Assembly (NCBI GenBank): GCA_965649765.1
Contig: OZ287748.1
Span: 94,240,001 to 94,304,000, forward strand
Direction: 5' to 3'
DNA length: 64,000 nucleotides
DNA from: Bispira polyomma
Taxonomy: Eukaryota
Below, in pieces: positions 47,170 to 47,275 of the stretch (within the stretch, counting starts at the first letter, position 1; every line of letters begins with the position of its first letter). The notes under the pieces are model-generated. The model was not told where the DNA came from and searched no databases. It saw only the letters and a program-made list of their open reading frames with translations. A program made the position numbers and the translations under genes.

Positions 47170-47275
47170 TACTAAAGAACATCTATTTCTTTTTGTATAT
47201 TTTCAGGTAAGAACTGTTTGCTGTTTATATTCTTCTGTAAAAAGTCATGTGATAGCAGCATCATAGAAGGTATGG
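47170..47275 (+). promoter_or_regulatory. Candidate recursive splice site (AG|GTAAGA) with a 63-nt RS-exon
   Basis: TACTAA branch-like motif, T-rich tract, TTTTCAG|GTAAGA at 47206/47207; second donor AAG|GTATGG at 47269/47270. Confidence 0.55.

What the first reader, a model, noticed from the sequence alone, without database searches (positions are those of the whole stretch)
47170..47275. Candidate recursive splice site with a stop-containing RS-exon
Seen: branch-like TACTAA, a long T-rich tract, then TTTTCAG immediately followed by GTAAGA, so using the acceptor regenerates a strong donor. A second donor 63 nt later (AAG|GTATGG) defines an exon with an in-frame TAG at codon 20 when read in phase 0, the phase of all candidate upstream exons. 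Established: this matches Drosophila ratchet points and vertebrate RS-exons in long introns. Inference: the 27-57 kb introns from exons A-C are removed in steps. I know of little documentation of recursive splicing in lophotrochozoans.
Basis: partly seen in the sequence, partly recalled or inferred. Interest (0 to 1): 0.75.

Follow-up and report, generated by a model that had tools for sequence, protein, structure and literature searches.

The report
Unproven recursive splice site look-alike
Deep inside a very long intron of a nerve-cell navigator-type gene lies a short stretch that looks like the stepping stones flies and mammals use to cut out long introns in stages, but no RNA data exist to show that it is used, and such stretches are no commoner in this genome than chance predicts.

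Summary
TACTAA is followed by a T-rich tract and then TTTTCAG|GTAAGA at 47206/47207. A second donor, AAG|GTATGG, lies 63 nt on, and TAG is codon 20.

The site is on the sense strand. It is downstream of a conserved ATG exon (15051-15974) and a short one (36101-36151). It is upstream of a neuron-navigator-type CH-domain exon 42 kb beyond the window, so the inferred introns are about 90 and 70 kb.

It is the only such site on either strand of 164 kb, where about 0.1 is expected per intron.

Recursive splicing itself could not be tested:
- The only three public runs are DNA.
- No relative's intron was reachable.

Genome-wide the composite motif is not enriched: 84 matches against 93 for the control, and 51 independent copies of the 13-mer core against 58. 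The 24-nt core has a second exact copy elsewhere.

My odds: fortuitous look-alike 0.45, true recursive site 0.3.

First readers flagged two other recursive-type candidates in this genome. Both are unverified.

The parts
47170..47176 (+). Branch-point-like TACTAAA. The likely branch A at 47175 is 31 nt before the AG.
   Evidence: In one search, TACTAA falls in the -18..-45 window of a random intron position with P=0.011, and CTAA with P=0.13. The stricter CTAAY and CTRAY forms are not met.
47185..47203 (+). T-rich polypyrimidine tract, 15 of 19 pyrimidines, with T at -4 to -7.
   Evidence: Only 2.0% of 19-nt windows in the intron reach this pyrimidine share.
47204..47206 (+). CAG acceptor.
47207..47212 (+). 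GTAAGA, a donor that would be regenerated after ligation to an upstream exon ending AAG. It matches the recalled MAG|GTRAGT consensus at 8 of 9 positions.
47207..47269 (+). 63-nt exon-like unit, the candidate cryptic RS-exon. It has no ATG-led coding potential: its only ATG is followed at once by TGA.
   Evidence: read by eye..
47264..47266 (+). TAG, codon 20 in phase 0.
   Evidence: A stop within 21 codons has P=0.73 in this intron, so it carries little weight.
47270..47275 (+). Downstream donor GTATGG after AAG, 7 of 9 consensus matches. It is weaker than the regenerated donor.
47190..47213 (+). 24-nt core that has one further exact copy in the genome, at C1:58519941-58519964 on the minus strand. 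The two are 33 of 36 identical over 36 columns, and the flanks are unrelated.
15051..15974 (+). Upstream ATG exon A: 308 codons, phase 0, donor AAG|GTAACG.
   Evidence: Its one homologue is P0001 (68% identity, E 7e-78). The similarity stops at the exon end, after which P0001 runs on from V.
36101..36151 (+). Putative short alternative first exon C: ATG, 17 codons, phase 0, donor AAG|GTAAGC.
   Evidence: It rests on sequence signals only.

Best explanation
The stretch is an exon-like look-alike, a pseudo-exon. It lies in the very long 5' intron of a neuron-navigator-type gene. It has a competent-looking acceptor fused to a strong donor, and a second donor 63 nt on. At least part of it most likely arose without selection: its 24-nt core exists twice in the genome. 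It is probably used rarely or not at all.

If the spliceosome does pick it up, the mechanics are fixed by the sequence. This part is inferred, not shown:
1. The upstream exon, which ends AAG, is joined to 47207.
2. This recreates AAG|GTAAGA.
3. That donor out-competes AAG|GTATGG, so the 63 nt and the rest of the intron are removed in a second step and leave no trace in mRNA.
4. If the second step fails, a stop-containing transcript results.

Shown here: the letters, the strand, the single-copy flanks, the gene context by homology, and the chance figures. Not shown: any use of the site in RNA.
For: - Genome-wide, the strict composite motif YYYYYYYYNYAGGTAAGT occurs 84 times against 93 for the reversed control. 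12 of the 84 lie in one tandem array.
- The exact core TTTTCAGGTAAGA occurs 105 times against 58 for the control. My estimate from base composition is about 86.
- I examined 95 of those 105 places. 5 places were not listed by the tool, and 5 extra copies inside two tandem arrays were dropped. The 95 collapse to 51 independent clusters, 12 of which are repeat families holding 56 members.
- 17 of the 95 have a donor 30-100 nt downstream. Same-width control windows gave 10, 19, 31 and 14. So there is no population of RS-exon-like units.
- The 24-nt core has a second exact copy on the same chromosome, with unrelated flanks. The large ORFs around that copy lie on the opposite strand.
- About 0.1 such sites are expected per 90-kb intron, which means thousands genome-wide.
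- Position +6 of the donor is A, and the base after the branch A is not a pyrimidine.
Against: - It is the only site of its quality on either strand of 164 kb.
- Adding the downstream donor (0.155) and CTAA (0.13) lowers the chance figure to roughly 0.002-0.015 per intron.
- It lies on the sense strand of an inferred 70-90 kb intron of a long neuronal-type gene. In flies, most introns over 40 kb hold recursive sites (PMC6110457, abstract passage).
- It has TT at -5/-6, as 196 of 197 fly ratchet points do (10.1101/006163, passage).
- The 851 bp upstream and the 301 bp around it are single copy, so it is not part of a recognisable transposon copy.
- The sense strand holds 12 AG|GTRAG against 3 on the antisense strand.
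Confidence: 0.45

Rival explanations
1. It is a true recursive splice site with a cryptic RS-exon. The 63-nt unit is defined as an exon and joined to exon A or C. The regenerated AAG|GTAAGA is then used to remove the unit together with the remaining 59 kb. The 90-kb (or 70-kb) intron therefore leaves in two steps, of 31.2 (or 11.1) kb and 59.1 kb.
For: All testable sequence hallmarks are met:
- AG|GT with a strong tract and TT at -5/-6 (compare the passage in 10.1101/006163).
- A short downstream cryptic exon of about 50 nt with a weaker donor and a stop, as described for fly and mammalian sites (PMC8605326 introduction; counts of 8/9 against 7/9).
- Sense strand of an inferred 70-90 kb intron of a navigator-type gene.
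- Segment sizes within the range reported for flies, up to 63.6 kb.
- The only site of this quality in 164 kb on both strands.
- Single-copy flanks.
Against: - No RNA and no cross-species data could be examined.
- There is no genome-wide excess of the motif and no excess of downstream donors at sites sharing the core. A fly-like abundance of selected ratchet points is therefore unlikely here.
- The core is duplicated elsewhere, at a place with no sign of being a sense intron.
- In mouse brain, recursive splicing is reported as rare (PMC8797253, title and start of abstract only).
Confidence: 0.3
2. It is an ordinary alternative exon that stays in stable transcripts. It could be a 5'-UTR exon of an isoform whose ATG lies further down, for example the ATG exon 43 kb downstream at extended coordinates 90359-91363. 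Or it could be a regulated poison cassette exon that sends the transcript to nonsense-mediated decay.
For: - Both splice sites look good and the length is exon-like.
- The gene appears to have several alternative 5' exons.
- The in-frame TAG would act as a poison signal after exon A or C.
- Mammals have hundreds of annotated exons that begin with a donor-like sequence (PMC6224609, abstract in the listing).
Against: - No convincing acceptor precedes the downstream ATG exon (read by eye).
- The unit has no coding potential in the gene's phase.
- No transcript data exist.
Confidence: 0.12
3. Only the donor half matters. CAG|GTAAGA would be one of several U1-binding sites on the sense strand that protect the long intron from premature cleavage and polyadenylation. 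The T-rich tract in front of it would be a coincidence.
For: - AG|GTRAG words number 12 on the sense strand and 3 on the antisense strand of the intron.
- YAGGTRAG is seen 7 times where 4.0-5.4 are expected on the sense strand, and 0 times where 3.1-4.4 are expected on the antisense strand.
- The idea of sense-strand U1 sites in long genes is recalled from the literature. I looked it up in no paper here.
Against: - Two of the 12 are donors of ATG exons, and some of the rest are repeat copies.
- The excess is small.
- It does not explain the tract, the branch motif or the second donor.
Confidence: 0.05
4. The gene model is wrong. Exon A and exon C would belong to other transcripts or not be exons at all, and 47207 would not lie in a transcribed sense intron.
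For: - The link from exon A or C to the CH exon rests only on strand, phase 0 and the absence of other detectable exons.
- Exon A's single homologue is an isolated 297-aa open reading frame.
Against: - Three ATG exons all end in phase 0 with good donors on the same strand. The CH exon starts in phase 0 behind a good acceptor.
Confidence: 0.05

Closest known systems
Drosophila intronic ratchet points with cryptic RS-exons (Ubx, kuz, Bx and others; Hatton 1998, Burnette 2005, Duff 2015, Joseph 2018, Pai 2018, as cited in PMC8605326 and PMC6110457)
   Same: - Tandem acceptor|donor around AG|GT.
- Prominent pyrimidine tract with TT at -5/-6.
- A short cryptic exon of about 50 nt behind it, with a weaker donor and a stop or frame shift.
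- Location in an intron above 40 kb.
- Segment sizes of tens of kb.
   Different: - No junction reads, sawtooth, lariats or conservation have been shown here.
- The donor is GTAAGA, not GTAAGT.
- The genome shows no excess of the composite motif. From memory, the fly genome holds hundreds of conserved sites; I ran no equivalent count on a fly genome.
Vertebrate RS-exons in long neuronal genes (Sibley 2015, recalled and cited in PMC8605326), and annotated RS-exons repressed by the exon junction complex (PMC6224609, abstract only)
   Same: - A long 5' intron of a long neuronal-type gene with alternative first exons.
- An RS-exon defined by a downstream donor.
- Inclusion would give a premature stop.
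- Such sites are rare genome-wide, which fits the lack of enrichment here.
   Different: Vertebrate sites were accepted on RNA evidence and on deep conservation of AGGTAAGT. Neither is available here.
Pseudo-exons and poison exons of long introns
   Same: An intronic unit with plausible splice sites at both ends and an in-frame stop. There is no evidence of use.
   Different: Few pseudo-exons begin with a strong donor directly at the acceptor. That feature is what would make this one self-erasing.

Membership tests
Recursive splice site / ratchet point with RS-exon | [quoted passage not shown] | tested here: met
   TTTTCAG|GTAAGA at 47206/47207 on the + strand. It is the only YAG|GTRAG with at least 75% pyrimidines upstream on either strand of 164 kb.
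Recursive splice site / ratchet point with RS-exon | Strong pyrimidine tract with TT at -5 and -6 (196 of 197 fly ratchet points; 10.1101/006163) | tested here: met
   T at -4 to -7, and 15 of 19 pyrimidines at 47185-47203.
Recursive splice site / ratchet point with RS-exon | Location inside a very long intron (most fly sites above 40 kb, most mouse sites above 51 kb) | tested here: inconclusive
   The inferred introns are 90,369 and 70,192 nt, running from exons A and C to the NAV-type CH exon. The exon links are inferred from strand and phase, not from RNA.
Recursive splice site / ratchet point with RS-exon | Short downstream cryptic exon whose donor is weaker than the regenerated one, usually out of frame or holding a stop (PMC8605326 introduction) | tested here: met
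   A 63-nt unit. AAG|GTAAGA scores 8/9 and AAG|GTATGG 7/9 against a recalled consensus. TAG is codon 20. No trained splice-site scoring model was available.
Recursive splice site / ratchet point with RS-exon | RNA evidence: exon-to-site junction reads, sawtooth intron coverage, lariats from the site | not testable with these tools
   The look-up of sequencing runs listed 3 runs, none on record as RNA. Laid on 44300-50200, they give contigs that run unbroken through the site, so they are DNA.
Recursive splice site / ratchet point with RS-exon | Evolutionary conservation of the AG|GT island relative to other intronic AGGT | not testable with these tools
Two samples of the species show no differing letter across 3.5 kb, which is uninformative.
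Recursive splicing as a common, selected feature of this genome (fly-like regime) | Excess of the composite acceptor|donor motif over controls | tested here: not met
   84 against 93 for the reversed control. 105 against 58 for the 13-mer core, which collapses to 51 independent clusters among the 95 examined. A downstream donor is present at 17 of 95, against 10-31 in control windows.
Neuron navigator (NAV / UNC-53 type) gene as host | NAV-type calponin-homology domain near the N-terminus | tested here: met
   A 39-aa exon at extended coordinates 106344-106460. Pfam CH gives E 3.4e-5 and 24.4 bits for a third of the domain. The only PDB match at E up to 1 is the human NAV2 CH domain 2yrn_A, at E 4.7e-12. 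The rest of the gene was not traced.

The most novel reading that the evidence does not exclude
This would be the first recursive splice site with a cryptic RS-exon seen in a lophotrochozoan. It would split a roughly 90-kb 5' intron of a neuron-navigator gene into steps of 31 and 59 kb. That would place RS-exon-mediated stepwise intron removal in all three great bilaterian branches and point to an ancestral mechanism for long neuronal genes. The second copy of the 24-nt core would then hint that ready-made acceptor|donor modules can be seeded by short repeated fragments.
Probability: 0.3. Interest if true: 0.55.

Novelty: new member of a known kind. Interest (0 to 1): 0.3.

Why it matters
Recursive splicing has been shown in flies and a few vertebrates. 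My searches of the held library found no paper on it in annelids, molluscs or lophotrochozoans (1, 2 and 0 papers, and by title the three are on unrelated subjects).

A validated site here would widen the known taxonomic range of the mechanism. It would also give a concrete locus for RT-PCR of the intermediate.

As it stands this is a well-formed candidate with no functional evidence. The genome-wide counts suggest that, if the mechanism operates here, it is rare, as in vertebrates, and not abundant, as in flies.

Tried and rejected
RNA route. I gave exon A (15051-15974) to the look-up of sequencing runs with kind rna. It listed 3 runs, none RNA. I laid all three on 44300-50200. Contigs run unbroken through the site with no differing letter, so they are DNA and say nothing about splicing. 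The joints and loose ends in that output lie at the poly-C tract (47487-47508) and at multi-copy sequence beyond it, not at 47207 or 47269.

Cross-species route. Exon A found one homologue in 1.84 billion representatives (P0001). I did not scan the bacterial, viral or metagenome collections for an animal intron.

Transposon origin.
- The 301 nt around the site, the 851 nt upstream and a 66-nt probe each match only themselves in the genome.
- A repeat family of about 20 copies lies 3 mismatches from the 24-nt core, but it resembles this locus over only 31-41 nt.
- I rejected the idea of a recognisable transposon copy. A short shared fragment is not excluded.

Coding first exon ending at 47206 or 47269. 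Rejected: there is no ATG in the open phase-0 stretch.

Cryptic last exon. The only PAS-like word within 1 kb downstream is ATTAAA at 48050. Not pursued.

Known RNA family. None at Rfam gathering score in 40000-54000.

Species-level enrichment. Tested and not found. The reversed-pattern control has a different dinucleotide make-up, so a modest enrichment cannot be excluded.

Second copy (L023). Its 40-kb surroundings hold several long + strand ORFs, and the copy is on the - strand. Pfam gave nothing decisive: 1 weak hit among 6 ORFs. Whether a - strand gene spans it is open.

Navigator genes and recursive splicing in print. One search, 'recursive splic' plus 'NAV2', found 2 papers, both incidental by title. 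Supplementary tables of the fly and mammal catalogues were not seen and may list navigator homologues.

Exon A, the downstream ATG exon and the CH exon were searched apart.

Full report
**What is there.**
- TACTAA at 47170-47175.
- A T-rich tract with 15 of 19 pyrimidines at 47185-47203.
- TTTTCAG ending at 47206, then GTAAGA from 47207.
- A 63-nt unit ending AAG at 47269, then GTATGG from 47270.
- In phase 0 the unit is open for 19 codons and has TAG as codon 20 (47264-47266).
- Read by eye: frame +1 stops at its letters 2-4, frame +2 is open, and the only ATG is followed directly by TGA.

The letters are not an assembly slip. Contigs from three DNA runs of two samples cover the site without a single differing letter.

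**Where it lies.** Upstream on the same strand is a 924-nt ATG exon (15051-15974, donor AAG|GTAACG).
- Its 308-aa product has exactly one homologue among 1.84 billion representative proteins: P0001, 68% identity, E 7e-78.
- The similarity ends at the exon's last codon. After that P0001 continues from a V, as expected for an open frame read on into a GT intron (the reading-on is my inference).

A second, 17-codon ATG exon ends at 36151 with AAG|GTAAGC.

I fetched 100 kb beyond the window and counted on from the window. There I found two more exons.
- A third ATG exon at 90359-91363, donor CAG|GTGAGA, phase 0.
- At 106344-106461, behind TTTTACAG, an exon that reads IYTDWANHYLEK... It matches Pfam CH at E 3.4e-5. 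Its only match among solved structures at E up to 1 is the CH domain of human neuron navigator 2, at E 4.7e-12.

All three ATG exons end in phase 0 and the CH exon starts in phase 0. The simplest model is a navigator-type gene with alternative 5' exons that all join the CH exon.
- This makes the introns 90,369 nt (from 15975) and 70,192 nt (from 36152).
- The candidate would split them into 31,232 or 11,055 nt, plus 59,137 nt.
- These links are inferred from strand and phase, not from RNA.
The exons were searched apart.

**Is it more than chance?**
- In the 90-kb intron the sense strand holds 12 AG|GTRAG and the antisense strand 3. Only 47207 has a strong tract.
- Markov models of order 1-3 predict 4.0-5.4 YAGGTRAG on the sense strand (7 seen) and 3.1-4.4 on the antisense strand (0 seen).
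- 2.0% of 19-nt windows reach 75% pyrimidines. About 0.08-0.1 composite sites are therefore expected per intron.
- 47207 is the only such site on either strand of 164 kb.
- A donor with at least 7 of 9 consensus matches lies 30-100 nt behind a random intron position with P=0.155. CTAA is in the branch window with P=0.13. A stop falls within 21 codons with P=0.73.
- Multiplied together, this gives roughly 0.002-0.015 per intron. The branch and second-donor terms were chosen after seeing the site.
- The regenerated AAG|GTAAGA matches the recalled consensus at 8 of 9 positions and AAG|GTATGG at 7 of 9. That is the strength order reported for real sites (PMC8605326, introduction read in full).

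**The decisive tests could not be run.**
- The look-up of sequencing runs returned three runs, none on record as RNA.
- Laid on 44300-50200, they give contigs that run unbroken through the site at even depth, so they are genomic DNA.
The orthologous intron of the species that holds P0001 could therefore not be read.

**What the rest of the genome says.** If this animal used strong ratchet points as often as flies do, the composite motif should stand out. It does not.
- YYYYYYYYNYAGGTAAGT occurs 84 times (31+53) against 93 (57+36) for the same pattern read backwards. 12 of the 84 lie in one tandem array.
- The exact core TTTTCAGGTAAGA occurs 105 times against 58. My estimate from base composition is about 86.
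- I fetched 94 loci, which cover 99 of the 100 listed places other than this one, keeping one copy from each of two tandem arrays. 5 places were not listed.
- With this site that makes 95. By their flanks they form 51 clusters: 39 singletons and 12 repeat families holding 56 members.
- 8 of 95 have at least 75% pyrimidines upstream.
- 17 of 95 have a donor 30-100 nt downstream, against 10, 19, 31 and 14 in four control windows of equal width.
- 3 of 95 have both tract and donor: this site, L023 and L032. Only this site also has CTAA.

So there is no visible population of RS-exon-like units. If recursive splicing occurs here, it is rare. The reversed control differs in dinucleotide content, so a small excess cannot be ruled out.

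**A second copy of the core.**
- L023 (C1:58519941-58519964, minus strand) carries the same 24 nt as 47190-47213. The two are 33 of 36 identical over 36 columns, with no similarity in 6 kb against 40 kb of flanks.
- No copies with 1 or 2 mismatches exist.
- A repeat family of about 20 copies lies 3 mismatches away, reading CAAGTAAAAA, but it resembles this locus over only 31-41 nt.
- From base composition I estimate about 2e-4 further exact copies of this 24-mer in the genome. Common origin from a short fragment therefore seems likelier than coincidence.
- L023 also has a full-consensus donor, AAG|GTGAGT, 75 nt downstream.
- The long ORFs around L023 are on the opposite strand, and Pfam did not name them. 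Nothing indicates that it sits in a sense intron.
- I read this as mild evidence that the acceptor|donor module arrived ready-made and was not shaped in place. It does not exclude use.

**Comparison with known systems.** The site works on paper like a fly ratchet point with a cryptic RS-exon.
- Tandem acceptor|donor; a cryptic exon of about 50 nt with a weaker donor, often holding a stop, which must be recognised and then excluded (PMC8605326 introduction).
- TT at -5/-6 in 196 of 197 fly sites, and segments up to 63.6 kb (10.1101/006163, passages).
- Recursive sites occur in most fly introns above 40 kb (PMC6110457, passages).
- Most mouse sites are in introns above 51 kb (10.1101/2024.12.11.627982, passage).

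Membership cannot be granted. RNA intermediates and conservation are the features on which all published sites were accepted, and both are untested here.

**Literature.**
- 'recursive splicing' with 'annelid' gave 1 paper, with 'mollus' 2, and 'recursive splic' with 'lophotrochozoa' 0. By title and abstract start, the three hits are on unrelated subjects.
- 'recursive splic' with 'NAV2' gave 2 incidental hits.
- Supplementary site lists were closed and may name navigator homologues.

**Verdict.** The interpretation cannot be decided with the data at hand.
- 0.45: fortuitous, rarely or never used look-alike.
- 0.30: true recursive site.
- 0.12: ordinary UTR or poison exon.
- About 0.05 each: a U1-site-only role, and a wrong gene model.

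If real, it would be a new member of a known kind in an unsampled clade. Interest 0.3.

First readers of this scan flagged two other recursive-type candidates elsewhere in this genome. I saw only their titles and tested neither.

Noticed in passing
window 47190-47213 and L023 (G000:C1:58519941-58519964, minus strand): An island of identity between two otherwise unrelated loci: 24 of 24 exact and 33 of 36 overall. Each is followed by a good donor, 63 and 75 nt downstream. There are no 1- or 2-mismatch copies in the genome. The origin (short repeat fragment, templated patch or convergence) is unexplained.
   Followed up: partly
extended coordinates 106344-106461 (L006:2344-2461) and 90359-91363 (L004:6359-7363), beyond the window end: A neuron-navigator-type gene starts here. 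Its first CH-domain exon (best solved match human NAV2 CH, E 4.7e-12) lies 42 kb past the window. A 335-codon ATG exon with a 25-nt local duplication around its start lies 26 kb past it.
   Followed up: partly
window 15975-64000 and on to extended coordinate 106343, + versus - strand: Donor-like AG|GTRAG words number 12 on the sense strand and 3 on the antisense strand of the inferred intron. YAGGTRAG is seen 7 times on the sense strand and 0 on the antisense strand, where about 4 are expected on each.
   Followed up: partly
window 46957-47110: Two imperfect direct copies of a unit of about 50-65 nt (TTATCCAAAT..GCCTAGAAAATCAT, and CATTTCCTGAATGTTTC) just upstream of the candidate. Tandem Repeats Finder did not report them. 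DNA contig depth is raised in that bin.
   Followed up: no
window 47452-48240 and 48161-48500: A poly-C tract (47487-47508) followed by multi-copy sequence, with DNA contig depth 4-5 times that of the flanks. There are also tandem arrays of 48-nt and 43-nt units.
   Followed up: no
window 50799-52094 +: A 431-aa open frame with a reverse-transcriptase domain (Pfam RVT_1, E 1.1e-28). This is a retroelement lying in the same orientation as the host intron.
   Followed up: no
window 6888 (+), 61680 (-) and extended coordinate 64647 (+): Copies of a short repeat reading ..GGGATTCGAACTCA..CCCAGAG|GTGAGAGACC, with a tRNA-arm-like core. Each carries a donor-like GTGAGA. A further copy lies near L023.
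   Followed up: no
window 61984-62563: A tandem array whose three long frames are all open, for example a PSIPNTSTKAPHTT-like unit on the minus strand.
   Followed up: no
G000:C8:15165841-15166386 (minus strand): A tandem array in which 12 units each carry a perfect pyrimidine-tract-TAG|GTAAGT composite.
   Followed up: no
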